A stretch of 64,000 nt of DNA from Phyllobates terribilis. Lineage: Eukaryota. The DNA is taken from assembly GCF_046119375.1 (NCBI RefSeq), contig NW_027362768.1:344100001-344164000 (forward strand), written 5' to 3'. Shown one piece after another: positions 14,401 through 60,606 of the stretch (positions are counted from its first letter, which is position 1; every line of letters begins with the position of its first letter). The translations under genes were made by a program, and so were the position numbers. The notes beneath the pieces were generated by a model that searched no databases, was not told where the DNA came from, and worked only from the letters and a program-made list of their open reading frames with translations.

Positions 14401-17400
14401 CTATATTAGTGCCGGTCACAATGCCCCCTATATTAGTGCCGGTCACAGTGCCCCCCCTATATTAGTGCCGGTCACAGTGCCCCCTATATTAGTGCCGGTC
14501 ACAGTGCCCCCTATAGTAGTGTCGGTCACAGTGCCCCCTATATTAGTGCCGGTCACAGTGCCCCCTATATTAGTGTCGGTCACAGTGCGCCCTATATTAG
14601 TGGCGGTCACAATGCCCCCCTATATTAGTGCCGGTCACAGTGCCCCCTATATTAGTGCCGGTCACAGTGCCCCCTATAGTAGTGCCGGTCACAGTGCCCC
14701 CTATATTAGTGCCGGTCACAATGCCCCCTATATTAGTGCCGGTCACAGCGCCCCCTATATTAGTGCCGGTCACAGCGCCCCCCCTATATTAGTGCCGGTC
14801 ACAATGCCCCCCCTATATTAGTGCCGGTCACAGTGCCCCCTATATTAGTGCCGGTCACAGTGCCCCCTATATTAGTGCCGGTCACAGTGCCCCCTAGAGT
14901 AGTGCCGGTCACAATGCCCCATATATTAGTGCCGGTCACAGCGCCCCCTACATTAGTGCCGGTCACAACGCCCCCTATAGTAGTGCCGGTCGCAGCGCCC
15001 CCTATATTAGTGCCGGTCACAACGCCCCCTATATTAGTGCCGGTCACAGCGCCCCCTATATTAGTGCCGGTCACAATGCCCCCCTATATTAGTGCCGGTC
15101 ACAGCGCCCTCTATATTAGTGCCGGTCACAGCGCCCCCTATATTAGTGCCGGTCACAGCGCCCCCTATATTAGTGCCGGTCACAGCGCCCTCTATATTAG
15201 TGCCGGTCACAGCGCCCCCTATATTAGTGCCGGTCACAGCGCCCCCTATATTACTGCCGGTCACAGCGCCCCCTATATTAGTGCCGGTCACAGCGTCCCC
15301 TATATTAGTGCCGGTCACAGCGTCCCCTATATTAGTGCCGGTCACGGCGCCCCCTATATTAGTGCCGGTCACAGCGCCCCCCCTATATTAGTGCCGGTCA
15401 CAATGCCCCCCCTATATTAGTGCCGGTCACAGTGCCCCCTATATTAGTGCCGGTCACAGTGCCACCTATATTAGTGCCGGTCACAGTGCCCCCTATAGTA
15501 GTGCCGGTCACAGTGCCCCCTAGAGTAGTGCCGGTCACAATGACCCCTATATTAGTGCCGGTCACAGCGCCCCCTACATTAGTGCCGGTCACAACGCCCC
15601 CTATAGTAGTGCCGGTCACAGTGCCCCCTAGAGTAGTGCCGGTCACAATGCCCCCTATATTAGTGCCGGTCACAGCGCCCCCTACATTAGTGCCGGTCAC
15701 AGCGCCCCCTACATTAGTGCCGGTCACAACGCCCCCTATAGTAGTGCCGGTCGCAGCGCCCCCTATATTAGTGCCGGTCACAACGCCCCCTATATTAGTG
15801 CCGGTCACAGTGCCCCCTATATTAGTGCCGGTCACAATGCCCCCTATATTAGTGCCGGTCACAGCGCCCCCTATATTAGTGCCGGTCACAGCGCCCCCCC
15901 TATATTAGTGCCGGTCACAATGCCCCCCCTATATTAGTGCCGGTCATAGTGCCCCCTATATTAGTGCCGGTCACAGTGCCCCCTATATTAGTGCCGGTCA
16001 CAGTGCCCCCTAGAGTAGTGCCGGTCACAATGCCCCATATATTAGTGCCGGTCACAGCGCCCCCTACATTAGTGCCGGTCACAACGCCCCCTATAGTAGT
16101 GCCGGTCGCAGCGCCCCCTATATTAGTGCCGGTCACAACGCCCCCTATATTAGTGCCGGTCACAGCGCCCCCTATATTAGTGCCGGTCACAATGCCCCCC
16201 TATATTAGTGCCGGTCACAGCGCCCTCTATATTAGTGCCGGTCACAGCGCCCCCTATATTAGTGCCGGTCACAGCGCCCCCTATATTAGTGCCGGTCACA
16301 GCGCCCTCTATATTAGTGCCGGTCACAGCGCCCCCTATATTAGTGCCGGTCACAGCGCCCCCTATATTACTGCCGGTCACAGCGCCCCCTATATTAGTGC
16401 CGGTCACAGCGTCCACTATATTAGTGCCGGTCACAGCGTCCCCTATATTAGTGCCGGTCACGGCGCCCCCTATATTAGTGCCGGTCACAGCGCCCCCCCT
16501 ATATTAGTGCCGGTCACAATGCCCCCCCTATATTAGTGCCGGTCACAGTGCCCCCTATATTAGTGCCGGTCACAGTGCCACCTATATTAGTGCCGGTCAC
16601 AGTGCCCCCTATAGTAGTGCCGGTCACAGTGCCCCCTAGAGTAGTGCCGGTCACAATGACCCCTATATTAGTGCCGGTCACAGCGCCCCCTACATTAGTG
16701 CCGGTCACAACGCCCCCTATAGTAGTGCCGGTCACAGTGCCCCCTAGAGTAGTGCCGGTCACAATGCCCCCTATATTAGTGCCGGTCACAGCGCCCCCTA
16801 CATTAGTGCCGGTCACAGCGCCCCCTACATTAGTGCCGGTCACAACGCCCCCTATAGTAGTGCCGGTCGCAGCGCCCCCTATATTAGTGCCGGTCACAAC
16901 GCCCCCTATATTAGTGCCGGTCACAGTGCCCCCTAGAGTAGTGCCGGTCACAATGCCCCCTATATTAGTGCCGGTCACAGCGCCCCCTACATTAGTGCCG
17001 GTCACAACGCCCCCTATAGTAGTGCCGGTCGCAGCGCCCCCTATATTAGTGCCGGTCACAGCGCCCCCTACATTAGTGCCGGTCACAACGCCCCCTATAG
17101 TAGTGCCGGTCACAGTGCCCCCTAGAGTAGTGCCGGTCACAACGCCCCCTATAGTAGTGCCGGTCGCAGCGCCCCCTATATTAGTGCCGGTCACAACGCC
17201 CCCTATATTAGTGCCGGTCACAATGCCCCCCTATATTAGTGCCGGTCACAGCGCCCTCTATATTAGTGCCGGTCACAGCGCCCCCTATATTAGTGCCGGT
17301 CACAGCGCCCCCTATATTAGTGCCGGTCACAGCGCCCTCTATATTAGTGCCGGTCACAGCGCCCCCTATATTAGTGCCGGTCACAGCGCCCCCTATATTA

Positions 17401-20400
17401 CTGCCGGTCACAGCGCCCCCTATATTAGTGCCGGTCACAGCGTCCCCTATATTAGTGCCGGTCACAGTGTCCCCTATATTAGTGCCGGTCAAAGCGTCCC
17501 CTATATTAGTGCCGGTCAAAGCGTCTCCAATATTAGTGCCAGTCAAAGCGTCTCCAATATTTGTGCCGGTCACAGTGCCCCCCTATATTAGCGCCGGTCA
17601 CAGCGCCCCCTATATTAGTGCCGGTCACAGTGCCCCCTATATTAGTGCCGGTCACAGTGCCCCCTATATTAGTGCCGGTCACAGTGCCCCCTATATTAGT
17701 GCCGGTCACAGCACCCCCTATATTAGTGCCGGTCACAGTGCCCCCTATATTAGTGCCAATCACAACACCCCCTATATTAGTGCCGGTCACAATGCCCCCC
17801 CTATATTAGTGCCGGTCACAGTGCCCCCTATATTAGTGCCGGTCACAGTGCCCCCTATATTAGTGCCAATCACAACACCCCCTATATTAGTGCCGGTCAC
17901 AATGCCCCCCCTATATTAGTGCCGGTCACAGTGCCCCCTATATTAGTGCCAATCACAACGCCCCCTATATTAGTGCCGGTCACAATGCCCCCCCTATATT
18001 AGTGCCGGTCACAGTGCCCCCTATATTAGTGCCGGTCACAGTGCCCCCTATATTAGTGCCAATCACAACACCCCCTATATTAGTGCCGGTCACAATGCCC
18101 CCCCTATATTAGTGCCAGTCACAGTGCCCCCTATATTAGTGCCAATCACAACGCCCCCTATATTAGTGCCGGTCACAATGCCCCCCCTATATTAGTGCCG
18201 GTCACAATGCCGCCCCTATATTAGTGCCGGTCACAGTGCCCCCTATATTAGTGCCGGTCACAGTGCCCCCTATATTAGTGCCAATCACAATGCCCCCATA
18301 TATTAGTGCCAGTCACAGTGCCCCCCTATATTAGTGCCGGTCACAGTGCCCCCTATATTAGTGTCGGTCACAGTGCCCCCTATATTAGTGCCAGTCACAG
18401 TGCCCCCCTACATTAGTGCCGGTCACAGTGCCCCCTATATTAGTGTCGGTCACAGTGCCCCCTATATTAGTGCCGGTCACAGTGCCCCCTATATTAGTGC
18501 CGGTCACAGTGCCCCCTATATTAGTGTCGGTCACAGTGCCCCCTATATTAGTGCCAATCACAATGCCCCCCTATATTAGTGCCAGTCACAGTGCCCCCCT
18601 ATATAAGTGCTGGTCACAGTGCCCCCTATATTAGTGTCGGTCACAGTGCCCCCTATATTAGTGCCGGTCACAGTGCCCCCCTACATTAGTGCCGGTCACA
18701 GTGCCCCCTATATTAGTGCCGGTCACAGTGCCCCCTATATTAGTGTCGGTCACAGTGCCCCCTATATTAGTGCCGGTCACAGTGCCCCCTATATTAGTGT
18801 CGGTCACAGTGCGCCCTATATTAGTGCCGGTCACAATGCCCCCCTATATTAGTGCCGGTCACAGTGCCCCCCTATATTAGTGCCGGTCACAATGCCCCCC
18901 TATATTAGTGCCGATCACAGTGCCCCCCTATATTAGTGCCGGTCACAGTGCCCCCTATATTAGTGCTGGTCACAGTGCCCCCTATATTAGTGCCGGTCAC
19001 AGTGCCCCCTATAGTAGTGCCGGTCACAGCGCCCCCTATAGTAGTGCCGGTCACAATGCCCCCTATATTAGTGCCGGTCACAGCGCCCCCTATATTAGTG
19101 CCGGTCACAATGCCCCCCCTATATTAGTGCCGATCACAGTGCCCCCTATATTAGTGCCGGTCACAGTGCCCCCTATAGTAGTGCCGGTCACAGAGCCTCC
19201 TAGAGTAGTGCCGGTCACAACGCCCCCTATATTAGTGCCGGTCGCAACGCCCCCTACATTAGTGCCGGTCACAACGCCCCTTATAGTAGTGCCGATCGCA
19301 GGGTCCCCTATATTAGTGCCGGTCACAACGCCCCCTATATTAGTGCCGGTCACAGCGCCCCCTATTTTAGTGCCGGTCACAATGCCCCCCTATATTAGTG
19401 CCGGTCACAGTGCCCTCTATATTAGTGCCGGTCACAGTGCCCCCTATATTAGTGCCGGTCACAGCGCCCCCTATATTAGTGCCGGTCACAGCGCCCTCTA
19501 TATTAGTGCCGGTCACAGTGCCCCCTATTTTACTGCCGGTCACAGAGCCCCCTAGAGTAGTGCCGGTCACAACGCCCCCTATATTAGTGCCGGTCAAAGC
19601 GTCTCCAATATTAGTGCCGGTCAAAGCGTCTCCAATATTTGTGCCGGTCACAGTGCCCCCCTATAGTAATGCCGGTCACAGTGCCCCCCCTATAGTAGTG
19701 CCGGTCACAGTGCCCCCCTATAGTAGTGCCGGTCACAGTGCCGGTCACAGTGCCCCCCTATAGTAGTGCCGGTCACAGTGCCCCCTATAGTAGTGCCGGT
19801 CACAGTGCCCCCTATAGTAGCGCCGGTCACAGTGCCCCCCTACATTAGTGCCGGTCACAGTGCCCCCCTATATTAGTGCCGGTCACAGTGCCCCCTATAT
19901 TAGTGCCGGTCACAGTGCCCTCTATATTAGTGCCGGTCACAGTGCCCCCCTATATTAGTGCCAGTCACAGTGCCCCCCTATATTAGTGCGGGTCACAGTA
20001 CTCCCTATATTAGTGCCGGTCACAGTGCATAGTAGTGCCGGTCACAGTACCCCCTATATTAGTGCGGGTCACAGTGCCCCCTATATTAGTGCCGGTCACA
20101 GTGCCCCCTATATTAGTGTCGGTCACAGTGCCCCCTATATTAGTACCGGTCACAGTGCCCACTATATTAGTGTCGGTCACAGTGCGCCCTATATTAGTGG
20201 CGGTCACAATGCCCCCCTATATTAGTGCCGGTCACAGTGCCCCCCTATATTAGTGCCGGTCACAATGCCCCCCTATATTAGTGCCGATCACAGTGCCCCC
20301 CTATATTAGTGCCGGTCACAGTGCCCCCTATATTAGTGCTGGTCACAGTGCCCCCCTATATTAGTGCCGGTCACAGCGCCCCCTATATTAGTGCCGGTCA

Positions 20401-23400
20401 CAGCGCCCCCTATATTTGTGCCGGTCACAGCGCCCCCTATAGTAGTGCCGATCACAGCGCCCCCTAAATTAGTGCCGGTCACAGCGCCCCCTATATTAGT
20501 GCCGGTCACAATGCCCCCTATATTAGTGCCGGTCACAGTGCCCCCCCTATATTAGTGCCGGTCACAGTGCCCCCTATATTAGTGCCGGTCACAGTGCCCC
20601 CTATAGTAGTGTCGGTCACAGTGCCCCCTATATTAGTGCCGGTCACAGTGCCCCCTATATTAGTGTCGGTCACAGTGCGCCCTATATTAGTGGCGGTCAC
20701 AATGCCCCCCTATATTAGTGCCGGTCACAGTGCCCCCTATATTAGTGCCGGTCACAGTGCCCCCTATAGTAGTGCCGGTCACAGTGCCCCCTATATTAGT
20801 GCCGGTCACAATGCCCCCTATATTAGTGCCGGTCACAGCGCCCCCTATATTAGTGCCGGTCACAGCGCCCCCCCTATATTAGTGCCGGTCACAATGCCCC
20901 CCTATATTAGTGCCGGTCACAGTGCCCCCTATATTAGTGCCGGTCACAGTGCCCCCTATATTAGTGCCGGTCACAGTGCCCCCTAGAGTAGTGCCGGTCA
21001 CAATGCCCCATATATTAGTGCCGGTCACAGCGCCCCCTACATTAGTGCCGGTCACAACGCCCCCTATAGTAGTGCCGGTCGCAGCGCCCCCTATATTAGT
21101 GACGGTCACAACGCCCCCTATATTAGTGCCGGTCACAGCGCCCCCTATATTAGTGCCGGTCACAATGCCCCCCTATATTAGTGCCGGTCACAGCGCCCTC
21201 TATATTAGTGCCGGTCACAGCGCCCCCTATATTAGTGCCGGTCACAGCGCCCCCTATATTAGTGCCGGTCACAGCGCCCTCTATATTAGTGCCGGTCACA
21301 GCGCCCCCTATATTAGTGCCGGTCACAGCGCCCCCTATATTACTGCCGGTCACAGCGCCCCCTATATTAGTGCCGGTCACAGCGTCCCCTATATTAGTGC
21401 CGGTCACAGCGTCCCCTATATTAGTGCCGGTCACGGCGCCCCCTATATTAGTGCCGGTCACAGCGCCCCCCCTATATTAGTGCCGGTCACAATGCCCCCC
21501 CTATATTAGTGCCGGTCACAGTGCCCCCTATATTAGTGCCGGTCACAGTGCCACCTATATTAGTGCCGGTCACAGTGCCCCCTATAGTAGTGCCGGTCAC
21601 AGTGCCCCCTAGAGTAGTGCCGGTCACAATGACCCCTATATTAGTGCCGGTCACAGCGCCCCCTACATTAGTGCCGGTCACAACGCCCCCTATAGTAGTG
21701 CCGGTCACAGTGCCCCCTAGAGTAGTGCCGGTCACAATGCCCCCTATATTAGTGCCGGTCACAGCGCCCCCTACATTAGTGCCGGTCACAGCGCCCCCTA
21801 CATTAGTGCCGGTCACAACGCCCCCTATAGTAGTGCCGGTCGCAGCGCCCCCTATATTAGTGCCGGTCACAACGCCCCCTATATTAGTGCCGGTCACAGT
21901 GCCCCCTAGAGTAGTGCCGGTCACAATGCCCCCTATATTAGTGCCGGTCACAGCGCCCCCTACATTAGTGCCGGTCACAACGCCCCCTATAGTAGTGCCG
22001 GTCGCAGCGCCCCCTATATTAGTGCCGGTCACAGCGCCCCCTACATTAGTGCTGGTCACAACGCCCCCTATAGTAGTGCCGGTCACAGTGCCCCCTAGAG
22101 TAGTGCCGGTCACAACGCCCCCTATAGTAGTGCCGGTCGCAGCGCCCCCTATATTAGTGCCGGTCACAACGCCCCCTATATTAGTGCCGGTCACAATGCC
22201 CCCCTATATTAGTGCCGGTCACAGCGCCCTCTATATTAGTGCCGGTCACAGCGCCCCCTATATTAGTGCCGGTCACAGCGCCCCCTATATTAGTGCCGGT
22301 CACAGCGCCCTCTATATTAGTGCCGGTCACAGCGCCCCCTATATTAGTGCCGGTCACAGCGCCCCCTATATTACTGCCGGTCACAGCGCCCCCTATATTA
22401 GTGCCGGTCACAGCGTCCCCTATATTAGTGCCGGTCACAGTGTCCCCTATATTAGTGCCGGTCAAAGCGTCCCCTATATTAGTGCCGGTCAAAGCGTCTC
22501 CAATATTAGTGCCAGTCAAAGCGTCTCCAATATTTGTGCCGGTCACAGTGGCCCCCTATAGTAGTGCCGGTCACATTGCCCCCCTATAGTAGTGCCGGTC
22601 ACAGTGCCCCCTATAGTAGTGCCGGTCACAGTGCCCCCTATAGTAACGCCGGTCACAGTGCCCCCATACATTAGTGCCGGTCACAGTGCCCCCCTATATT
22701 AGTGCCGGTCACAGTGCCCCCCTATAGTAGTGCCGGTCACAGTGCCAGTCACAGTGCCCCCCTATAGTAGTGCCGGTCACAGTGCCCCCTATAGTAGTGC
22801 CGGTCACAGTGCCCCCTATAGTAGCGCCGGTCACAGTGCCCCCCTACATTAGTGCCGGTCACAGTGCCCCCCTATATTAGTGCCGGTCACAGTGCCCCCT
22901 ATATTAGTGCCGGTCACAGTGCCCCCCTATAGTAGTGCCGGTCACAGTGCCCCCCTATAGTAGTGCCGGTCACAGTGCCCCCTATAGTAGTGCCGGTCAC
23001 AATGCCCCCTATAGTAGCGCCGGTCACAGTGCCCCCCTACATTAGTGCCGGTCACAGTACCCCCCTATATTAGTGCCGGTCACAGTGCCCCCTATATTAG
23101 TGCCGGTCACAGTGCCCCCTATATTAGTGCCGGTCACAGTGCCCCCCTATATTAGTGCCAGTCACAGTGCCCCCCTATATTAGTGCGGGTCACAGTACCC
23201 CCTATATTAGTGCCGGTCACAGTGCATAGTAGTGCCGGTCACAGTACCCCCTATATTAGTGCGGGTCACATTGCCCCCTATATTAGTGCCGGTCACAGTG
23301 CCCCCTATATTAGTGTCGGTCACAGTGCCCCCTATATTAGTGCCGGTCACAGTGCCCCCTATATTAGTGTCGGTCACAGAGCGCCCTATATTAGTGGCGG

Positions 23401-26127
23401 TCACAATGCCCCCCTATATTAGTGCCGGTCACAGTGCCCCCCTATATTAGTGCCGGTCACAATGCCCCCCTATATTAGTGCCGATCACAGTGCCCCCCTA
23501 TATTAGTGCCGGTCACAGTGCCCCCTATATTAGTGCTGGTCACAGTGCCCCCCTATATTAGTGCCGGTCACAGCGCCCCCTATATTAGTGCCGGTCACAG
23601 CGCCCCCTATATTTGTGCCGGTCACAGCGCCCCCTATAGTAGTGCCGGTCACAGCGCCCCCTATATTAGTGCCGGTCACAATGCCCCCTATATTAGTGCC
23701 GGTCACAGCGCCCCCTATATTAGTGCCGGTCACAATGCCCCCCCTATATTAGTGCCGGTCACAGTGCCCCCTATATTAGTGCCGGTCACAGTGCCCCCTA
23801 TAGTAGTGTCGGTCACAGTGCCCCCTATATTAGTGCCGGTCACAGTGCCCCCTATATTAGTGGCGGTCACAGTGCGCCCTATATTAGTGGCGGTCACAAT
23901 GCCCCCCTATATTAGTGCCGGTCACAGTGCCCCCCTATATTAGTGCCGGTCACAATGCCCCCCTATATTAGTGCCGATCACAGTGCCCCCCTATATTACT
24001 GCCGGTCACAGCGTCCCCTATATTACTGCCGGTCACAGCGCCCCCTATATTAGTGCCGGTCACAGCGTCCCCTATATTAGTGCCGGTCACAGCGTCCCCT
24101 ATATTAGTGCCGGTCAAAGCGTCTCCAATATTAGTGCCGGTCAAAGCGTCTCCAATATTTGTGCCGGTCACAGTGCCCCCCTATAGTAGTGCCGGTCACG
24201 GTGCCCCCCCTATATTAGTGCCGGTCACAGTGCCCCCCTATAGTAGTGCCGGTCACAGTGCCGGTCACAGTGCCCCCCTATAGTAGTGCCGGTCACAGTA
24301 CCCCCTATAGTAGCGCCGGTCACAGTGCCCCCCTATATTAGTGCCGGTCACAGTGCCCCCTATATTAGTGCCGGTCACAGTGACCCCTATATTAGTGCCA
24401 GTCACAGTGCCCCCCTATATTAGTGCGGGTCACAGTACCCCCTATATTAGTGCCGGTCACAGTGCATAGTAGTGCGGGTCACAGTACCCCCTATATTAGT
24501 GCGGGTCACAGTGCCCCCTATATTAGTGCCGGTCACAGTGCCCCCTATATTAGTGTCGGTCACAGTGCCCCCTATATTAGTGCCGGTCACAGTGCCCCCT
24601 ATATTAGTGTCGGTCACAGTGCGCCCTATATTAGTGGCGGTCACAATGCCCCCCTATATTAGTGCCGGTCACAGTGCCCCCCTATATTAGTGCCGGTCAC
24701 AATGCCCCCCTATATTAGTGCCGATCACAGTGCCCCCCTATATTAGTGCCGGTCACAGCGCCCCCTATATTAGTGCCGGAAACAGTGCCCCCCTATATTA
24801 GTGCCGGTCACAGCGCCCCCTATATTTGTGCCGGTCACAGCGCCCCCTATAGTTGTGCCGGTCACAGCGCCCCCTATATTAGTGCCGGTCACAGTGCCCC
24901 CTATATTAGTGCCGGTCACAGTGCCCCCTATATTAGTACCGGTCACAGTGCCTCCTATAGTAGCGCCGGTCACAGTGCCCCCTATATTAGTGCCGGTCAC
25001 AGTGCCTCCTATATTAGTGCCGGTCACAGTGCCTCCTATAGTAGCGCCGGTCACAGTGCCCCCTATATTAGCGCCGGTCACAGTGCCCCCTATATTAGTG
25101 CCGGTCACAGTGCCCCCTATATTAGTGCCGGTCACAGTGCCCCCTATATTAGTGCCGGTCACAGTGCCCCCTATATTAGTGCCGGTCACAGTGCCCCCTA
25201 TATTAGTGCCGGTCACAGTGCCTCCTATAGTAGCGCCGGTCACAGTGCCCCCTATATTAGTGCCGGTCACAGTGCCTCCTATATTAGTGCCGGTCACAGT
25301 GCCCCCTATATTAGTGCCGGTCACAATGCCCCCCCTATATTAGTGCCGGTCACAGTGCCCCCTATATTAGTGCCGGTCACAGTGCCTCCTATATTAGTGC
25401 CGGTCACAGTGCCCCCTATATTAGTGCCGGTCACAGTGCCCCCTATATTAGTGCCGGTCACAGTGCCTCCTATAGTAGCGCCGGTCACAGTGCCTCCTAT
25501 AGTAGCGCCAATCACAGTGCCTCCTATATTAGCGCCGGTCACAGTGCCCCCTATATTAGCGCCGGTCACAGTGCCCCCTATATTAGCGCCGGTCACAGTG
25601 CCCCCTATAGTAGCGCCAATCACAGTGCCTCCTATATTAGCGCCGGTCACAGTACCCTCTATATTAGCGCCGGTCACAGTGCCCCCTATATTAGCGCCGG
25701 TCACAGTGCCCCCTATATTAGCGCCGGTCACAGTGCCCCCTATATTAGCGCCGGTCACGGTGCCCCCTACATTAGTGCCGGTCACAGTGCCCCCTACATT
25801 AGTGCCGGTCACAGTGCCCCCTATATTAGCGCCGGTCACAGTGCCCCCTACATTAGTGCCGGTCACAGTGCCTCCTACATTAGTGCCGGTCACAGTGCCC
25901 CCTATATTAGCGCCGGTCACAGTACCCTCTATATTAGCGCCGGTCACAGTGCCCCCTATATTAGCGCCGGTCACAGTGCCCCCTATATTAGTGCCGGTCA
26001 CAGCGCCCCCTATATTAGCGCCGGTCACAGTGCCCCCTACATTAGTGCCGGTCACAGTGCCTCCTACATTAGTGCCGGTCACAGTACCCTCTATAGTAGT
26101 GCCAGTCACAGTGCCCCTATATAAGTG
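8466..26127. repeat. 27-bp tandem satellite, ~17.7 kb, ~650 units, with higher-order repeats
   Basis: Consensus TATATTAGTGCCGGTCACAGTGCCCCC. The C-run varies, giving 27-29-bp units. Continuous from 8466 to ~26127 with no unique spacers. Confidence 0.98.
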
Positions 26128-32399: not shown

Positions 32400-33210
32400 T
32401 GTGGATGATGAGAGGGACTTAACAAAATCAGAGCCACGAGAGACTCTTCAGAACAGCAACCAGGACACATGGCTCCATCAAAAAAGACACAGATTTGACT
32501 CTACAGAATGTCAGCTTAGGGGACCCCGGCCCCAGCTGGAAGAACACACATCTGTTCAATTGAATATCACTGAACCGATGGACACGTTTGGGGAAGCCAG
32601 GATTGTGACCCTCCAGTCACCTGACCCCAGGGATTCGTTTGGATAAACCAGGTTGGGACCATCCAGTCGCCTGGCTCCATGTAGATGTTTGGGGAAGCCA
32701 GGATTGTGACCCTCTGGTCACCTGGTCCCATGGGTACATTCGGAGAAACCAGGTTAGGACCAACTGGTCGCCTGGCCCCATGGAGACCTTTGGAGGAGCC
32801 AGGTTGGGACCATCCAGTCGTCTGGCCCCATGGAGATGTTGGGACCATCCGGTCGCCTGGCCCCATGGAGACGTTTGGAGGTGCCAGGTTGGGACCATCC
32901 GATCACCTGGACACGTGCCTCAATGTTTTGTCAGCTTCCTAAACTTGTCATTAACTCCTCTCTGTGGGTTTCCGCCAAAAGTGGAGTGCCATTGGTAGGG
33001 GTGGTTGGCCCTGGAAGCCCCGGAGTCACTGTTGCTCTAATCCCGGCGAGTCAGCGGAAGGGTGAGACTCTAATTTTGCACCATCTTGGGTATTTTGCTG
33101 GGACTGTTCTATATGTTTGGTGGTCCAATAAAGTATTGCCACACTGTTTTACCCTCACCCTGTGTTGTCTGAGTAGTATTCTGCCCACGGGAGACCCCTG
33201 TGCCCCCACA
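32400..33210 (+). mobile_element. LTR-like fragment containing a degenerate ~50-bp tandem repeat (~32575-32910)
   Basis: TGTGG...CCACA termini. Repeats of CCCCATGGAGACGTTTGGAGGAGCCAGGTTGGGACCATCCGGTCGCCTGG. AATAAA near 33127 followed by a GT-rich tract. No clean TSD at these boundaries. Confidence 0.4.
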
Positions 33211-33376
33211 GGGGTTGTCCCCAATAAAAGCATATCATCAATCCACAGGATAGATAATGATAAATGTGTAATTAGTGGGAGTCAAAACACTGAGACCTCC
33301 ACTAATCCTGAGAATAGGGAGCTCAGTTTGAATAGGGTTGAAGTGAGCATGTGCGACCACTGCTCTATTTACTGTA

Positions 33377-34942
33377 CAGTCATGGTCAAAAGTTTCGAGA
33401 ATGACACCAAAATTATATTTTCACATGATCTGCTGGCCTCTGGTTTTTATTAGTGTTTGTCTGATGTTTATATCACATACAGAAATATAATTGCAATCAT
33501 ATTATGAGTACCAATAGGTTATATTGACTGTTAGAATGAGTTAATGCAGCAAGTCAATATTTGCAGTGTTGCCCCTTCTTCTTCAAGACCTCTGTAATTC
33601 TCCCTGGCATGCTCTCAATCAACTTTTGGACCAAATCCTGACTGATAGCAGTCCATTCTTGCATAATCAATGCTTGCATTTTGCCAGAATTTGTTGGTTT
33701 TTGTTTGTCCACCCGTCTCTTGATGATTGACCACAAGTTCTCAATGGGATTAAGATCTGGGGAGTTTCCAGGCCATGGACCCAAAATCTCTATGTTTTGT
33801 TCCATGAGCCATTTAGTTATCACCTTTGCTTTATGGCAAGGTGCTCCATCATGCTGGAAAAGGCATTGTTGGGCGCCAAACTGCTCTTGGACGGTTGGGA
33901 GAAGTTGCTCTTGGAGGACATTCTGGTACCATTCTTTATTCATGGCTGTGTTTTTAGGCAAGACTGTAAGTGAGACGATTCCCTTGGCTGAGAAGCAACC
34001 CCACACATGAATGGTTTCAGGATGCTTTACAGTTGGCATGAGACAAGACTGGTGGTAGCGCTCACCTCTTCTTCTCCGAATAAGCTGTTTTCCAGATGTC
34101 CCAAACAATCGAAAAGGGGATTCATCAGAGAAAATGACTTTGCCCCAGTCCTCAGCAGTCCACTCCCTGTACCTTTTGCAGAATATCAGCCGGTCCCTGA
34201 TGTTTTTTCTGGAGAGAAGTGGCTTCTTTGCTGCCCTCCTTGAAACCAGCCCTTGCTCAAAGAGTCTCCGCCTCACAGTGCGTGCGGAAGCACTCACACC
34301 AGCCTGCTGCCATTCCTGAGCAAGCTCAGCACTGTTGGTAGTCCGATCCCGCAGCTGAAACAGTTTTAAGATACGGTCCTGGCGCTTGCTGGTCTTTCTT
34401 GGGCGCCCTGGAGCCTTTTTGACAACAATGGAAGCTCTCTCCTTGAAGTTCTTGATGATGCGATAGATTGTTGACTGAGGTGCAATCTTTGTAGCTGCGA
34501 TACTCTTCCCTGTTAGGCCATTTTTGTGCAGTGCAATGATGGCTGCACGTGTTTCTTTAGAGATAACCATGGTTAACTGAAGAGAAACAATGATACCAAG
34601 AACCAGCCTCCTTTTAAAGTGTCCAGTGATGTCATTCTTACTTAATCATGACTGATCGCCAGCCCTGTCCTCATCAACACCCACACCTGTGTTAATGGAT
34701 CAATCACTAAAACGATGTTAGCTGCTCCTTTTAAGGCAGGACTGCAATGATGTTGAAATGTGTTTTGGGGGTTAAAGTTCATTTTCTGGGCAAATATTGA
34801 CTTTGCAAGTACAGTAATTGCTGTTAAGCTGATCACTCTTTGACATTCAGGAGTATATGCAAATTGCCATTACAAAAAATGAAGCAGTAAACTTTGGAAA
34901 AATTACTATTTGTCTCATTCTCAATACTTTTGGCCATGACTG
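33377..34942 (-). mobile_element. Full-length Tc1/mariner element, DD35E (Traveler-type), 1566 bp; ARL6IP5 intron 1, antisense
   Basis: TA at 33375-33376 and 34943-34944. Short TIRs CAGTCATGGTCAAAAGTTTCGAGAATGACAC versus CAGTCATGGCCAAAAGTATTGAGAATGAGAC (27/31). Single uninterrupted transposase ORF. Confidence 0.95.
33554..34570 (-). CDS. Transposase, 338 aa, uninterrupted, DD35E catalytic triad
   Basis: N-terminal HTH region with GRPR, AKKPLL, VIFSDES (D1), FQHDGAPCH (D2), SPDLNPIENLW (E). I count 35 residues between D2 and E. Confidence 0.95.
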   Translation of the reverse strand: MVISKETRAAIIALHKNGLTGKSIAATKIAPQSTIYRIIKNFKERASIVVKKAPGRPRKTSKRQDRILKLFQLRDRTTNSAELAQEWQQAGVSASARTVRRRLFEQGLVSRRAAKKPLLSRKNIRDRLIFCKRYREWTAEDWGKVIFSDESPFRLFGTSGKQLIRRRRGERYHQSCLMPTVKHPETIHVWGCFSAKGIVSLTVLPKNTAMNKEWYQNVLQEQLLPTVQEQFGAQQCLFQHDGAPCHKAKVITKWLMEQNIEILGPWPGNSPDLNPIENLWSIIKRRVDKQKPTNSGKMQALIMQEWTAISQDLVQKLIESMPGRITEVLKKKGQHCKY

Positions 34943-36099
34943 TATGTAGGCGGAATTGTCGCACATGCTCACTGCTGCTCCAGTCATACAGGGGAAGTTG
35001 GGATTGGTGGCAGGGGGGCATAGCTGCAGGTCATCATTGAAAACAGTCAGCAAGTTTGCAGTTACCCATGCCCTGATGGAATAGCTTAGTTTCTCCAACA
35101 GTGCCTAACATAAAGAGTTGAAAGATTCATAGGTGCTTGGTCCAACAGCCACATCAATTGTCCATGGCCTCATAACCTTATCCTACCTGCTGGAAGCGGA
35201 GAGATTTTAGCTCTGAAACCTCCTGAATTTGGAATTCAGCTGTGGACAAAGACACCGACTGTAAATCCACATGTTCTGAGTTATTTCTTGGTATGTGTAG
35301 CGTTGCAGTTGTGTTTGGAGATCACGGCCCTACAGCATTTGTGCTCGGCGCCGGCTCTTGCGCAGCTTTCCCCTGTTCACTTTTGGGTGTTGGCCGTGTG
35401 AGCGCACATCTGTTAACGTTCTGTTCCTGCGGCCTTGATGATATTCACTTTTTCCAGGCTGTTCTAAGAAGCTATTTGTCGGCTATATTTAGCTCGGTGC
35501 TTATTACGTCCAACCTCGGATCTGCTGTTCGCTGCCTGTGGAGGAAAGCGGCCAAGTAATGATGGAGTGAGCTGAGCAGGTGGAGGCTGGAGTAATGTAA
35601 AGAGTTCTGGAGGCTGCGGGGGGATCCAGGGAGCGGCTGCACCTCTGATATATGCTCTCGTTATTATATGTATATAATCCACTGATCAGGCATAACAATA
35701 AAACCACTCAGTGCTGGGACATAGAGGCGGCGAATGGACAGTCAGTCCTTGATGTTGATGGGATGGAAGCGGGAAAACGAGCAAAAGTAAAGAGATGAGT
35801 GACGCTGGCGAGGGCCGAAATGTGATGTCTGGATGACTGACGGAGGATCTATAAAACCGCAGGACATGTGAGAGGGTTATACCATTAGAAGACGAGGAAG
35901 GACAACCGGTGATCCGGCGACAGGGTAATGGGGCGCCTGTGGCGTATTGATACTCATGAGGAGTGAAGCTTTAGGCCGTCTGGTCCAAGACCACCGAAGA
36001 ATCTGTAGTGCAAACTGCTTAAAAAGTTCCTGCCGCCATGGCAGAGGGGAGTCGGGACGCAGAGGGTGGTGCTGCTCTGGCGTAGAAAAGTTGGTTTGC

Positions 36100-39000
36100 G
36101 CAGGGCGTCGCCTCTCTCTTTGGAGGGAATGACTGAGGTGCCGCCTTTCTCTGGTGGAGGGAATGACTGGGGCGCCGCCTCTCTCTGGCTGAGGGGGGGT
36201 TGGCTCACGCAGGGCGCCGCCTCTCTCTCCAGCTGAGGGGGGGAGTTTGGGGCGCTCAGGGTGCCGCCTCTCTAGCTGAGGGGGGGAGGTTGGGGCGCTC
36301 AGGGTGCCGCCTCTCTCTAGCTGAGGGGGGCCTGTGGTGCTCAGGGTGCCACCTCTCTCTAGCTGAGGGGGGGGGTTTGGGGCGCTCAGGGCGCCACCTC
36401 TCTCTAGCTGAGGGGGGGGTTGGGGTACTCAGGGTGCCGCCTCTCTCTCTAGCTGAGGGGGGGGTTGAGGTACTCAGGGTGCCGCCTCTCTCTCTAGCTG
36501 AGGAGGGGGGGGTTAGGGCGCTCAGGGTGCCGCCTCTCTCTCTAGCTGAGGAGGGGAGGGGTTGGGGCGCTCAGGGTGCCGCCTCTCTCTCTAGCTGAGG
36601 AGGGGGGGGGGTTGGGGCGCTCAGGGTGCCGCCTCTCTCTCTAGCTGAGGAGGGGGGGGTTGGGGCTCTCAGGGCGCCGCCTCTCTCTCTCTAGCTGAGG
36701 GGGGGGGGGTTGGGGCGCTCGGGGCGCCGCCTCTCTCTCTAGCTGAGGGGTGGGGCGCTCGGGGCGCCGCCTCTCTCTCTAGCTGAGGGGGGGGGGGGTT
36801 GGGGTGCTCGGGGCGCCGCCTCTCTCTCTAGCTGAGGGGTGGGGCGCCGCCTCTCTCTCTAGCTGAGGGGTGGGGCGCTCGGGGCGCCGCCTCTCTCTAG
36901 CTGAGGGGTGGGGCGCTCGGGGCGCCGCCTCTCTCTCTAGCTGGGGGGAGGGGCCCTCAGGGCGCCGCCTCTCTCTCTAGCTGGGGGGAGGGGTTGGGGC
37001 GCTCGGGGCGCTGTCACTCTCTCTAGTTGAGGGGGGGGTTGGGGCGCCGCCTCTCTCTAGTAAAGGGGGGGAGCGCTCGGGGCGCCGCCTCTCTCTAGCT
37101 GAGAGGGGGGGGTTTTGGGCGCTGCCTCTCTCTCTAGCTGAGGGGGGGGGGGTTGGGGCACTCGGGGCGCTGCCTCTCTCTCTAGCTGAGGGGGGGGGGG
37201 GTTGGGGCACTTGGAGCGCTGCCTCTCTCTCTAGCTGAGGGGGGGGTTGGGGCACTTGGGGCGCTGCCTCTCTCTCTAGCTGAGGGGGGGGGGGTTGGGG
37301 CACTCGGGGCGCTGCCTCTCTCTAGCTGAGGGGGGGGGTTGGGGCTCTCGGGGCACCGCCTCTCTCTCTAGCTGAGGGGGGGGGTTGGGGCACTCGGGGC
37401 GCCGCTTCTCTCTCTAGCTGAGGGGGGGGTAGGGGCACTCGGGGTGCCGCCTCTCTCGCTGAGGGTGGGGTTGAGGAGCTCGGGGCGCCGCCTCTCTCTA
37501 GCTGAGGGTGGGGTTGGGGAGCTCGGGGCGCCGCCTCTCTCTCTAGCTGAGGCGGGGGGGTTGGGGTGCTCAGGGCGCCGCCTCTCTCTCTAGCTGAGGG
37601 GGGGGGGGGGGGTTGGGGCGCTCAGGGCGCCGCCTCTCTCTCTAGCTGAGGGGGGTTGTGGCGCTCAGGGCGCCGCCTCTCTAGCTGAGGGGGGGGGGTT
37701 GGGGCGCTCAGGGCGCCGCCTCTCTCTCTAGCTGAGGGGGGGGGGGTTGGGGCGCTCAGGGCACCGCCTCTCTCTAGCTGAGGGGGGGGGTTGGGGTGCT
37801 CGGGGCGCCGCTTCTCTCTCTAGCTGAGGGGGGGGGGGGTTTGGGGTGCTCGGGGCGCCGCTTCTCTCTCTAGCTGAGGGGGGGGGTTTGGGGTGCTCGG
37901 GGCGCCGCTTCTCTCTCTAGCTGAGGGGGGGGGGTTTGGGGTGCTCGGGGCGCCGCTTCTCTTTCTAGCTGAGGGGGGGGGTTTGGGGTGCTCGGGGCGC
38001 CGCTTCTCTCTCTAGCTGAGGGGGGGGGGGTTTGGGGTGCTCGGGGCGCCGCTTCTCTCTCTAGCTGAGGGGGGGGGGGTTTGGGGTGCTCGGGGCGCCG
38101 CTTCTCTCTAGCTGAGGGGGGGGGGTTTGGGGTGCTCGGGGCGCCGCTTCTCTCTCTAGCTGAGGGGGGGGGTTGGGGCGCTCGGGGCGCCGCTTCTCTC
38201 TCTAGCTGAGGGGGGGGGTTGGGGCGCTCGGGGCGCCGCCTCTCTCTCTCTAGCTGAGGGGGGGGTTGGGGCGCTCGGGGCGCCGCCTCTCTCTCTCTAG
38301 CTGAGGGGGGGGATTGGGGCGCTCGGGGCGCCGCCTCTCTCTAGCTGAGGGGTGGGGCGCCGCCTCTCTCTCTAGCTGGGGGGAGGGGCCCTCAGGGCGC
38401 CGCCACTCTCTCTAGCTGGGGGGAGGGGTTGGGGCGCTCGGGGCGCTGCCACTCTCTCTAGTTGAGGGGGGGGGTTGGGGCGCCGCCTCTCTCTCTAGTA
38501 AAGGGGGGGAGCGCTCGGGGCGCCGCCTCTCTCTGGCTGAGAGGGGGGGGTTTTGGGCGCTGCCTCTCTCTAGCTGAGGGGGGCGGTTGGGGCACTCGGG
38601 CGCTGCCTCTCTCTCTAGCTGAGGGGGGGGGTTGGGGCACTCAGGCGCTGCCTCTCTCTCTAGCTGAGGGGGGGGTTGGGGCACTCGGGGCGCTGCCTCT
38701 CTCTCTAGCTGAGGGGGGGGTTGGGGCACTCGGGGTGCCGCCTCTCTCGCTGAGGGTGGGGTTGAGGAGCTCGGGGCGCCGCCTCTCTCTAGCTGAGGGT
38801 GGGGTTGGGGAGCTCGGGGCGCCGCCTCTCTCTCTAGCTGAGGGGGGGGGGTTGGGGTGCTCAGGGCGCCGCCTCTCTCTCTAGCTGAGGGGGGGGGGGT
38901 TGGGGCGCTCAGGGCGCCGCTTCTCTCTCTAGCTGAGGGGGGGGGGGGTTGGGGCGCTCAGGGCGCCGCCTCTCTCTCTAGCTGAGGGGGGGGGGGTTGG

Positions 39001-41275
39001 GGCGCTCAGGGCGCCGCCTCTCTCTCTAGCTGAGGGGGGTTGTGGCGCTCAGGGCGCCGCCTCTCTAGCTGAGGGGGGGGGGTTGGGGCGCTCAGGGCGC
39101 CGCCTCTCTCTCTAGCTGAGGGGGGGGGGTTGGGGCGCTCGGGGCACCGCTTCTCTCTCTAGCTGAGGGGGGGGGGGGGTTTGGGGTGCTCGGGGCGCCG
39201 CTTCTCTCTCTAGCTGAGGGGGGGGGTTTGGGGTGCTCGGGGCGCCGCTTCTCTCTCTAGCTGAGGGGGGGGGTTTGGGGTGCTCGGGGCGCCGCTTCTC
39301 TCTCTAGCTGAGGGGGGGGGGTTTGGGGTGCTCGGGGCGCCGCTTCTCTCTCTAGCTGAGGGGGGGGGGGGGTTTGGGGTGCTCGGGGCGCCGCTTCTCT
39401 CTCTAGCTGAAGGGGGGGTTGGGGCGCTCGGGGCGCCGCTTCTCTCTCTAGCTGAAGGGGGGGTTGGGGCGCTCGGGGCGCCGCCTCTCTCTCTCTAGCT
39501 GAGGGGGGGGGTTGGGGCGCTCGGGGCGCCGCCTCTCTCTCTCTAGCTGAGGGGGGGGGTTGGGGCGCTCGGGGCGCCGCCTCTCTCTCTCTAGCTGAGG
39601 GGGGGGATTGGGGCGCCGCCTCTCTCTCTAGCTGAGAGGTGGGGCGCCGCCTCTCTCTCTAGCTGGGGGGAGGGGCCCTCAGGGCGCCGCCTCTCTCTCT
39701 AGCTGGGGGGAGGGGCCCTCAGGGCGCCGCCACTCTCTCTAGCTGGGGGAAGGGGTTGGGGCGCTCGGGGCGCTGCCACTCTCTCTAGTTGAGGGGGGGG
39801 TTGGGGCGCCGCCTCTCTCTCTAGTAAAGGGGGGGAGCGCTCGGGGCGCCGCCTCTCTCTGGCTGAGAGGGGGGGGTTTTGGGCGCTGCCTCTCTCTCTA
39901 GCTGAGGGGGGCGGTTGGGGCACTCGGGCGCTGCCTCTCTCTCTAGCTGAGGGGGGGGGGTTGGGGCACTCGGGCGCTGCCTCTCTCTCTAGCTGAGGGG
40001 GGGGGGTTTGGGGTGCTCGGGGCGCCGCTTCTCTCTCTAGCTGAGGGGGGGGGGGTTTGGGGTGCTCGGGGCGCCGCTTCTCTCTCTAGCTGAAGGGGGG
40101 GTTGGGGCGCTCGGGGCGCCGCTTCTCTCTCTAGCTGAAGGGGGGGTTGGGGCGCTCGGGGCGCCGCCTCTCTCTCTAGCTGAGGGGGGGGGTTGGGGCG
40201 CTCGGGGCGCCGCCTCTCTCTCTCTAGCTGAGGGGGGGGGTTGGGGCGCTCGGGGCGCCGCCTCTCTCTCTCTAGCTGAGGGGGGGGTTGGGGCGCTCGG
40301 GGCGCCGCCTCTCTCTCTCTAGCTGAGGGGGGGGATTGGGGCGCCGCCTCTCTCTCTAGCTGAGAGGTGGGGCGCCGCCTCTCTCTCTAGCTGGGGGGAG
40401 GGGCCCTCAGGGCGCCGCCACTCTCTCTAGCTGGGGGGAGGGGTTGGGGCGCTGCCACTCTCTCTAGTTGAGGGGGGGGTTGGGGCGCCGCCTCTCTCTC
40501 TAGTAAAGGGGGGGAGCGCTCGGGGCGCCGCCTCTCTCTGGCTGAGAGGGGGGGGTTTTGGGCGCTGCCTCTCTCTCTAGCTGAGGGGGGCGGTTGGGGC
40601 ACTCGGGCGCTGCCTCTCTCTCTAGCTGAGGGGGGGGGGTTGGAGCACTCGGGCGCTGCCTCTCTCTCTAGCTGAGGGGGGGGTTGGGGCACTCGGGGCG
40701 CTGCCTCTCTCTCTAGCTGAGGGGGGGGGTTGGGGCACTCGGGGCGCTGCCTCTCTCTCTAGCTGAGGGGGGGGTTGGGGCACTCGGGGCGCCGCCTCTC
40801 TCTAGCTGAGGGGGGGGGTTGGGGCACTCGGGGCGCCGCTTCTCTCTCTAGCTGAGGGGGGGGGGGGTTGGGGCACTCGGGGCGCCGCTTCTCTCTCTAG
40901 CTGAGGGGGGGGGGTTGGGGCACTCGGGGTGCCGCCTCTCTCGCTGAGGGTGGGGTTGAGGAGCTCGGGGCGCCGCCTCTCTCTAGCTGAGGGTGGGGTT
41001 GGGGAGCTCGGGGCGCCGCCTCTCTCTCTAGCTGAGGGTGGTGTTGGGGCGCTAGGGGCGCCGCCTCTCTCTAGCTGAGGGGGGGGGTTGGGGTGCTCGG
41101 GGCGCTGCCTCTCTCTCTAGCTGAGGGGGGGGTTGGGGCACCGCCTCTCTCTAGCTGTGGTGGGGGGGGGGTTTAGGGCGCCGCCTCTCTCTCTCTCTCT
41201 CTAGCTGAGGGGGGGGGGATTGGAGCGCTCAGGGCGCCACCTCTCTCTCTAGCTGGGGGGGGGGGGGGGCACTCG
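36100..41275 (+). repeat. G-rich ~45-bp tandem array, ~5.2 kb, ~115 units, ARL6IP5 intron 1
   Basis: Unit CTAGCTGA-G(6-13)-TT-GGGG-CGCTC-GGGG-CGCCGCC-(TC)n with variable G and TC run lengths. Confidence 0.96.
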
Positions 41276-60447: not shown

Positions 60448-60606
60448 NNNNNNNNNNNNNNNNNNNNNNNNNNNNNNNNNNNNNNNNNNNNNNNNNNNNN
60501 NNNNNNNNNNNNNNNNNNNNNNNNNNNNNNNNNNNNNNNNNNNNNNNNNNNNNNNNNNNNNNNNNNNNNNNNNNNNNNNNNNNNNNNNNNNNNNNNNNNN
60601 NNNNNN
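60448..60606. other. Assembly gap (159 N)
   Basis: Run of n characters. Confidence 1.

What the first reader, a model, noticed from the sequence alone, without database searches (positions are those of the whole stretch)
33377..34942. Full-length DD35E (Traveler-type) transposon with an uninterrupted transposase
The catalytic spacing is 35, not the canonical 34, because of an extra residue in ILGPWP versus VLEWP; the window's other Tc1 at 60814 counts 34. DD35E, ~30-bp TIRs, ~1.5-kb length and ~340 aa match the described Traveler family, reported as a recent, horizontally spread invader of fish, frogs and squamates. All three catalytic residues, GRPR, both TIRs and both TA sites are present, so this is a candidate active or easily revived element. 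Four mismatches between the TIRs suggest it is not brand new.
Basis: partly seen in the sequence, partly recalled or inferred. Interest (0 to 1): 0.7.

Follow-up and report, generated by a model that had tools for sequence, protein, structure and literature searches.

The report
Ordinary young Traveler (DD35E) transposon copy
This is one structurally complete, young copy of the already described Traveler jumping gene, present in this frog-like genome in very many near-identical copies. It is ordinary, apart from a valine at a position where every compared relative has glycine.

Summary
Window 33377-34942 is a 1566-bp Tc1/mariner element with CAGTC...GACTG ends and 31-bp terminal inverted repeats (TIRs) with 4 mismatches. 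It is flanked by TA on both sides and carries one uninterrupted 338-aa ORF on the minus strand. The ORF has GRPR, D149, D241 and E277, so the spacing is 35.

The family call holds. The extra residue is not private. The protein sits in a fully supported all-DD35E clade with salmon, platyfish, carp and mudminnow proteins, and it matches sequences printed in the Traveler paper's supplement. A 96.8% identical copy lies in Ranitomeya imitator.

Reads from three samples of the host show the element at enormous depth. At only 4 of 1566 positions does at least 10% of the laid depth differ from this copy (there it is all of it), so the copy is young. By the same test the TIR mismatches are subfamily-wide, so they say nothing about age.

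There is one caution on activity. Residue 199 is Val, where 113/113 DD34E and 32/32 DD35E intact relatives have Gly. The reads suggest the whole host subfamily shares this Val. Whether the transposase works is therefore open.

The scan had already noted several other intact DD35E copies in this same genome, and one follow-up called one of them ordinary. Novelty is low.

The parts
33375..33376 (.). Left TA target-site duplication
   Evidence: Read directly from the sequence.
33377..34942 (-). Whole Traveler (DD35E) element, 1566 bp, with the gene on the minus strand
   Evidence: Only one copy lies in the window. It is 96.8% identical over its full length to a Ranitomeya imitator copy, L003:22556-24129.
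33377..33407 (+). Terminal inverted repeat at the 3' end of the gene, starting CAGTC
   Evidence: 27 of 31 bases match the other TIR.
34912..34942 (-). Terminal inverted repeat at the 5' end of the gene; its reverse complement starts CAGTC
34943..34944 (.). Right TA target-site duplication
   Evidence: Read directly from the sequence.
33554..34570 (-). Transposase ORF, 338 aa plus TGA stop, uninterrupted
   Evidence: ORF listing. Pfam HTH_Tnp_Tc3_2 covers residues 66-135 and DDE_3 covers 145-291. The AlphaFold model has mean pLDDT 89, and its best structural matches are the SB catalytic domain and Mos1.
34397..34408 (-). GRPR motif, residues 55-58, between the two HTH units
   Evidence: Codons checked.
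34124..34126 (-). Catalytic D149
   Evidence: Invariant column in alignment A1; codon checked.
33848..33850 (-). Catalytic D241
   Evidence: Invariant column; codon checked.
33740..33742 (-). Catalytic E277, 35 residues after D241
   Evidence: Invariant column; codon checked.
33776..33781 (-). G264-P265, the site of the extra residue that makes the spacing 35. It lies in the loop between strand 261-263 and the helix that starts at 276.
   Evidence: SB100X alignment gap, column counts and secondary structure of the model.
33974..33976 (-). Codon 199, GTC = Val, where all compared relatives have Gly (equivalent to SB G204)
   Evidence: Gly in 113/113 DD34E and 32/32 DD35E intact relatives, and in every close relative including the Ranitomeya imitator copy. 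The position was not flagged as differing from the host reads.
34334..34336 (-). Codon 79, AAC = Asn. This is the only non-synonymous difference between this copy and the host family's majority (AGC = Ser).
   Evidence: read laying place 34335; codon effect worked out.
33551..33564 (.). Inner 14-nt exact inverted repeat, arm 1, overlapping the last codons and the stop
34790..34803 (.). Inner 14-nt exact inverted repeat, arm 2, in the 5' UTR

Best explanation
This is a young, structurally complete copy of the Traveler (DD35E/TR) family of Tc1/mariner DNA transposons. It is one of a very large number (roughly 10^4 by read depth) of near-identical copies in an anuran genome whose closest named relatives are from the poison frog Ranitomeya imitator.

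Mechanism, inferred from the family: the 338-aa transposase binds the CAGTC-ended TIRs through its paired HTH/GRPR N-terminal domain. It cuts the element out and pastes it into a TA dinucleotide with its RNase-H-like DDE domain (D149, D241, E277), and the TA is duplicated on insertion.

The 35-residue spacing comes from one extra residue in the loop after the fifth strand. That residue is inherited from the family's ancestor and is not a private change.

This copy inserted recently. Apart from 4 private point changes (one non-synonymous, N79) it matches the letter carried by at least 90% of the host read depth.

Whether its own protein is catalytically competent is unproven. It carries Val199 at a position that is otherwise invariably Gly. 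I put about 35% on this copy encoding a working transposase and about 85% on the family having transposed recently in this lineage.
For: - Anatomy matches a complete element.
- Published Traveler features match: about 1.5 kb, about 338 aa, DD35E, short TIRs ending in CAGTC, TA duplication, hosts among fish, frogs and squamates (PMC7093834).
- The paper's supplement prints TR-Rhma (Rhinella marina, 1563 bp, 338 aa). Its first 146 nt differ from this element at 12 places by my count. It also prints TR-Pola, which differs at 8 of the 91 N-terminal residues shown.
- Protein search: 97-98% identity to partial Ranitomeya imitator gene models, 90-91% to Xiphophorus, 83% to Salmo salar 'transposase-like'.
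- Tree of 72 rows: an all-DD35E clade of 19 with support 100/97 holds this protein.
- Sequence and fold match to the SB catalytic domain and to Mos1.
- Host reads: summed word depth over the element is about 3-6e5 against about 8 on the unique flank. In run X1, 5251 contigs were laid and 3032 of them are at least 99% alike. Only 4 places are flagged as differing.
- dN/dS of 0.23-0.31 against copies from other samples shows past selection on the protein.
- Other intact copies in the same genome were noted by the scan.
Against: - Val199 replaces a Gly that is invariant in 145/145 compared relatives, so the protein may be impaired.
- There is no evidence of excision or of an empty allele. The joints seen near the site carry unrelated letters and match only 20-25 nt on a side, so they are short side-matches that show no empty allele.
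- The depth figures come from contigs, and the tool warns that they are not copy numbers.
- The link to the name Traveler rests on the paper's printed sequences compared by eye and on proxy proteins from species the paper lists (Salmo salar, Cyprinus carpio). It does not rest on a tree containing the paper's own reference set.
Confidence: 0.92

Rival explanations
1. This particular copy is an autonomous, currently active element whose own transposase is functional and mobilises it and its siblings.
For: - The ORF is open, the triad, GRPR and both CAGTC termini are intact, and TA flanks both ends.
- It is only 4 changes from the host majority.
- Val199 appears to be shared by at least 90% of the host copies, so the burst happened with Val199 in place. 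That is easiest to explain if Val199 is tolerated.
- The Oophaga pumilio genome paper reports a salmon-like Tc1 family at 39,000-78,000 copies with transcripts in ova (PMC6278860).
Against: - Val199 sits at a position where 145/145 relatives have Gly.
- N79 is a private non-synonymous change in the second HTH.
- Full-length copies can be moved in trans by a minority of Gly199 copies.
- No empty site, excision footprint or clear RNA evidence was found. Run X15 is only guessed to be RNA.
Confidence: 0.3
2. The 35-residue spacing is a private or trivial 1-aa insertion in an ordinary DD34E Tc1 element, so the Traveler label is unwarranted.
For: - Spacing 35 arose more than once. P0264, P0276 and P0271 have it but fall inside DD34E clades.
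- The authors of the family themselves say TR, IC and IT may be subfamilies derived from DD34E/Tc1 (PMC7731502).
Against: - The insertion is shared by every member of a 100/97-supported clade of 19 non-redundant proteins, down to 47% identity. These include proteins from species listed as Traveler hosts.
- The element also matches Traveler in its CAGTC termini, its length and the printed sequences.
Confidence: 0.02
3. The ORF is a domesticated host gene, or part of a host transcript, rather than a transposon copy.
For: The ORF is open, and between-lineage dN/dS is below 1.
Against: - Both TIRs and the TA duplication are intact.
- The sequence is present at about 10^4-fold the flank depth.
- dN/dS between the two closest outside copies is about 1.
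- A follow-up on another copy in this genome found only normal host splicing.
Confidence: 0.02

Closest known systems
Traveler (DD35E/TR) family of Tc1/mariner transposons (Zong et al. 2020, PMC7093834), in particular TR-Rhma of Rhinella marina and the fish copies of Poecilia/Xiphophorus
   Same: - DD35E spacing, 338-aa transposase with two HTH units, GRPR and DDE.
- About 1.56 kb long, with short TIRs ending in CAGTC and a TA duplication.
- High copy number in an anuran.
- About 92% nucleotide identity over the 146 nt of TR-Rhma printed in the supplement, and 90-91% protein identity to Xiphophorus.
   Different: - The host appears to be a dendrobatid-like frog, which is not among the four anurans listed in 2020.
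- The host subfamily carries Val at residue 199, where all others have Gly.
- The TIRs have 4 mismatches in 31, against 39/39 at 97% in TR-Rhma.
Tc1-3_SSa-like family of Oophaga pumilio (Rogers et al. 2018, PMC6278860)
   Same: It is a salmon-like Tc1 element at tens of thousands of low-divergence copies in a poison frog, proposed to have been transferred horizontally between fish and frogs and transcribed in ova. Here the protein is 83% identical to a Salmo salar transposase, and the read depth indicates roughly 10^4 copies.
   Different: Identity with Tc1-3_SSa could not be tested because RepBase is not available. This is a lead, not a result.
Sleeping Beauty (DD34E/Tc1), SB100X catalytic domain, PDB 5CR4
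   Same: Same fold and catalytic residues (E 3.3e-44, 37% identity, TM 0.82 on the target), the KKPLL linker motif, and TA target choice by family.
   Different: SB has one residue fewer between the second D and the E. It has long IR/DR ends of about 230 bp with two binding sites per end, against short TIRs here. SB has Gly204 where this copy has Val199.

Membership tests
Traveler (DD35E/TR) | Catalytic triad with 35 residues between the second D and the E | tested here: met
   D241 and E277. The gap lies at G264 in the SB100X alignment.
Traveler (DD35E/TR) | Falls inside the monophyletic TR clade, separate from DD34E/Tc1 | tested here: met
   An all-DD35E clade of 19 rows with support 100/97 includes Salmo salar, Cyprinus, Xiphophorus and Umbra proteins; 50 DD34E rows lie outside it. 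The paper's own reference set could not be loaded, so the named link uses proxies plus the printed supplement sequences.
Traveler (DD35E/TR) | Total length about 1.5 kb with a single ORF of about 340 aa | tested here: met
   1566 bp and 338 aa.
Traveler (DD35E/TR) | Short TIRs (13-68 bp) ending in CAGTC or CAGCC, flanked by a TA duplication | tested here: met
   31-bp TIRs, CAGTC at both ends, TA on both sides.
Traveler (DD35E/TR) | Two HTH motifs, GRPR and a nuclear localisation signal in the N-terminal half | tested here: met
   Pfam HTH_23/HTH_SB (residues 3-46) and HTH_Tnp_Tc3_2 (66-135). GRPR at 55-58. Six helices in the model. The NLS was not run through a predictor; basic stretches at 51-66 and 110-116 are visible.
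Tc1/mariner superfamily | RNase-H-like DDE/D catalytic domain plus paired-like DNA-binding domain | tested here: met
   Pfam DDE_3. Foldseek finds 5cr4 (E 2e-18) and full-length Mos1 3hos (TM 0.68).
DD34E/Tc1 sensu stricto | 34 residues between the second D and the E | tested here: not met
   The spacing is 35.
Autonomous, currently active element | Open ORF with catalytic triad and intact termini | tested here: met
Autonomous, currently active element | No substitution at positions invariant across the family | tested here: not met
   Val199 against Gly in 145/145 relatives.
Autonomous, currently active element | Insertion polymorphism, excision footprints or de novo insertions | tested here: inconclusive
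   Only contigs were available. No clean empty-site joint was seen. Junction contigs in samples S1 and S2 reach only 23 nt into the element.
Autonomous, currently active element | Transposition in an assay | not testable with these tools
   This needs a bench experiment.

The most novel reading that the evidence does not exclude
The host's dominant Traveler subfamily reached roughly 10^4 copies while encoding Val at a position (SB G204 equivalent, strand beta-3 of the RNase-H fold) that is Gly in every other Tc1-family transposase compared. There are two readings. Either this is a naturally active vertebrate DD35E transposase that tolerates the change and is still jumping, with this copy as a possible source. 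Or an entire full-length subfamily is being moved in trans by a small minority of Gly199 copies.
Probability: 0.3. Interest if true: 0.45.

Novelty: new member of a known kind. Interest (0 to 1): 0.2.

Why it matters
It matters little as a single locus. It adds a dendrobatid-like frog to the hosts of a transposon family known for fish-frog-reptile horizontal transfer, and it agrees with published reports that Tc1 elements have swollen poison-frog genomes.

The only point with some reach is the Val199 subfamily. If it is active, it would be a natural, un-reconstructed vertebrate Tc1-type transposase of the DD35E family, for which I found no published activity test. If it is inactive, it is a clear case of full-length copies amplified in trans.

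Tried and rejected
- I looked for the exact protein in public assemblies; none is on record.
- I looked for other copies in the window; there are none, only two broken DD34E Tc1 elements at about 30% identity.
- I looked for an empty allele in three host samples. The joints at 33361/33369/33371 to 34958 carry 8-21 unrelated letters and match only 20-25 nt on a side. I read them as short side-matches, probably from other copies of the flanking inverted repeat, and not as empty sites.
- An Rfam scan of the region and flanks found nothing.
- The flanks are not repeated elsewhere in the window.
That step was left out.
- I could not tie the RepBase name Tc1-3_SSa to Traveler.
- I did not use the large representative-protein search, because the word searches settled the protein.
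- The host species is coded by the tools. I did not try to uncover it beyond noting the closest named proteins.

Full report
**Observation**

The stretch 33377-34942 is a 1566-bp element that begins CAGTC and ends GACTG, with TA directly on each side at 33375-33376 and 34943-34944. Its two ends form a 31-bp inverted repeat with four mismatches, at positions 10, 18, 20 and 29. Weaker complementarity extends to 48 nt.

The minus strand carries one uninterrupted ORF, 34570..33554, of 338 aa. Pfam assigns HTH_Tnp_Tc3_2 (E 1.4e-17) and DDE_3 (E 6e-14), plus weaker N-terminal HTH families. GRPR is residues 55-58. The catalytic residues are D149, D241 and E277, so 35 residues separate the second D from the E.

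HMMER aligns residues 111-338 to the Sleeping Beauty (SB) catalytic domain, SB100X chain 5cr4_A, at E 3.3e-44. The window's other Tc1 at 60814 has spacing 34 and is broken into two ORFs.

**What it is**

The Traveler paper (PMC7093834) defines the family by several features:
- DD35E spacing
- length of about 1.5 kb
- a transposase of about 340 aa with two HTH motifs, GRPR and an NLS
- short TIRs of 13-68 bp that end in CAGTC or CAGCC
- TA duplications

It reports hosts among ray-finned fish, four anurans and two squamates. Among them, Rhinella marina has more than 8000 copies.

The supplement prints TR-Rhma (1563 bp, 338 aa, CAGTC/CAGTC). By my count its first 146 nt differ from this element at 12 places. 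It also prints the N-terminal part of TR-Pola, which differs from this protein at 8 of 91 residues.

The word search gave these hits:
- 97-98% identity to partial gene models of Ranitomeya imitator
- 95% and 93% to proteins from short Logan contigs
- 90-91% to Xiphophorus
- 83% to Cyprinus, Oncorhynchus, Umbra and a Salmo salar 'transposase-like' protein

Every full-length top hit with a readable motif has spacing 35, including those at 45-66% identity.

I gathered DD34E proteins with two more word searches. One started from the window's own DD34E Tc1, and the other from the most distant DD35E hit. I read the spacing from an alignment and built trees.

In the careful tree of 72 non-redundant rows, this protein lies in a clade of 19 rows, all DD35E, with support 100/97. 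Its nearest rows are a Logan protein and Xiphophorus, then Salmo salar and Umbra. The 50 DD34E rows lie on the other side. The extra residue is therefore inherited, not private.

One nuance emerged. Three further proteins with spacing 35 (P0264, P0276, P0271) fall inside DD34E clades. The spacing has therefore arisen, or been lost, at least three times in this sample. The clade identifies Traveler; the number 35 alone does not. The family's authors themselves say TR may be a subfamily derived from DD34E/Tc1 (PMC7731502).

**Structure**

An AlphaFold model built on 41 sequences has mean pLDDT 89. It shows six N-terminal helices followed by an RNase-H-like domain. Foldseek's best matches are the SB catalytic domain (E 2e-18, TM 0.82 on the target) and full-length Mos1 transpososome chains (TM about 0.68). 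The extra residue lies in the loop between strand 261-263 and the helix that begins at 276 and carries E277.

**Relatives at the DNA level**

A full-length copy in the Ranitomeya imitator assembly (L003:22556-24129) is 96.8% identical and carries a 1-nt frameshift. Two copies on Logan contigs are 94.5% and 94.9% identical.

Against these three copies, dN/dS is 0.23-0.31. Between the two Logan copies it is about 1. That is the usual pattern for a transposase: selected between lineages and neutral once inserted. The counts are small.

**Copy number and age in the host**

The run index found the stretch in six DNA runs of one coded organism (three samples, two studies) at 0.64-0.76 of its words. 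Runs of several other coded organisms hold only an element-sized share.

I laid contigs of three host samples and one possible RNA run on 32900-35400. The summed word depth over the element is about 3-6e5, against about 8 on the unique right flank. In run X1, 5251 contigs were laid, and 3032 of them are at least 99% alike. The tool warns that this is not a copy number. I take it only as roughly 10^4 copies, which is the scale reported for the salmon-like Tc1 family of Oophaga pumilio (PMC6278860).

In all three DNA runs, the contigs differ from the window at only four places. There, all of the depth carries the other letter:
- 33529, in the 3' UTR
- 34190, synonymous
- 34286, synonymous
- 34335, Asn79 here against Ser in the family

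This copy is therefore about 0.26% from its subfamily majority (Poisson 95% range 0.07-0.65%). With an assumed neutral rate of about 1e-9 per site per year, that means a few million years at most. This is an inference with a several-fold error.

None of the four TIR mismatches was flagged. Position 29 is shared with the Ranitomeya copy. The mismatches therefore appear to belong to the subfamily and say nothing about this copy's age.

**Is it active?**

The ORF, the triad, GRPR and the termini are intact. I then compared the protein column by column with its relatives. One position stands out. Residue 199 is Val (GTC, 33974-33976). Gly stands there in 113 of 113 DD34E and 32 of 32 DD35E intact relatives, and in every close relative, including the Ranitomeya copy.

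In the SB100X alignment this position is SB G204. [quoted passage not shown]

The reads did not flag 33975, although they did flag four other places where the Ranitomeya and Logan copies also differ from the window. At least 90% of the host depth therefore seems to carry Val. Two readings follow:
- Val199 is tolerated, and the burst was driven by a Val199 transposase.
- Full-length Val199 copies are moved in trans by a Gly199 minority.

I cannot decide between them.

No clean empty-site joint was seen. The joints near the site carry unrelated letters and match only 20-25 nt on a side, so I read them as short side-matches, probably from other copies of the flanking inverted repeat (33326-33357 / 34958-34989). 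Contigs of samples S1 and S2 run from 34920 into the unique flank without a mismatch, but only 23 nt of them lie in the element. That is below the tool's criterion for bridging. Run X15 is only guessed to be RNA, so I draw nothing about expression from it.

I found no published activity test of a Traveler element.

**Verdict**

The element is one young copy of a described family that is very abundant in this genome. The scan had already noted several other intact DD35E copies on other DNA of the same genome, and one follow-up called such a copy an ordinary Traveler insertion.

Novelty is low: a new host lineage at most, probably already seen under another name in Oophaga pumilio. The Val199 subfamily is a small open question that a copy census and a standard transposition assay would settle.

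**Limits**

That step was left out.
- The host species is coded by the tools.

Noticed in passing
window 8466-26127: A 17.7-kb tandem array of a 27-bp unit, about 646 copies at 89% matches. It gives rise to long spurious periodic ORFs.
   Followed up: no
window 36169-41139: A G-rich array of about 45-bp units, 1.2 kb downstream of the element. The scan already noted it as s1-215481.
   Followed up: no
window 33551-33564 and 34790-34803: An exact 14-nt inverted repeat inside the element. One arm lies over the last codons and the stop, the other in the 5' UTR. It is conserved in the Ranitomeya and both Logan copies, and only 1 of 500 shuffles gives any such repeat. It could be an inner transposase-binding site or a relic of a longer inverted repeat.
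   Followed up: partly
window 34652; L003 copy: In run X15 (the same coded organism, possibly RNA), the only contig over this place carries a 4-nt insert (TGAT). The three DNA runs lack it, but the Ranitomeya imitator copy has it. A second subfamily may dominate that run.
   Followed up: no
proteins P0264, P0276, P0271: These three Tc1 transposases have spacing 35 but fall inside DD34E clades. P0276 even has the same ILGPWPGNSPDLNP motif. The spacing has therefore changed at least three times in the sample.
   Followed up: partly
window 60814-61880 and 610-1514: Two broken DD34E Tc1 copies. One is split into 146-aa and 202-aa ORFs beside the N run at 60448-60606. The other is Sleeping-Beauty-like.
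   Followed up: partly
window 33068-33235 and 33326-33357 / 34958-34989: The sequence just left of the insertion is itself highly repeated in the host reads (depth about 8e4). The immediate flanks form a 32-nt imperfect inverted repeat, so the element may have landed inside another small repeat.
   Followed up: partly
protein P0089 and relatives (Fundulus, Cyprinodon): This DD35E lineage is 59% identical to Traveler over the catalytic 71% of its length but only about 46% identical overall. Its N-terminus is Pax/SB-like, which may mean it is a domain-swapped relative.
   Followed up: no
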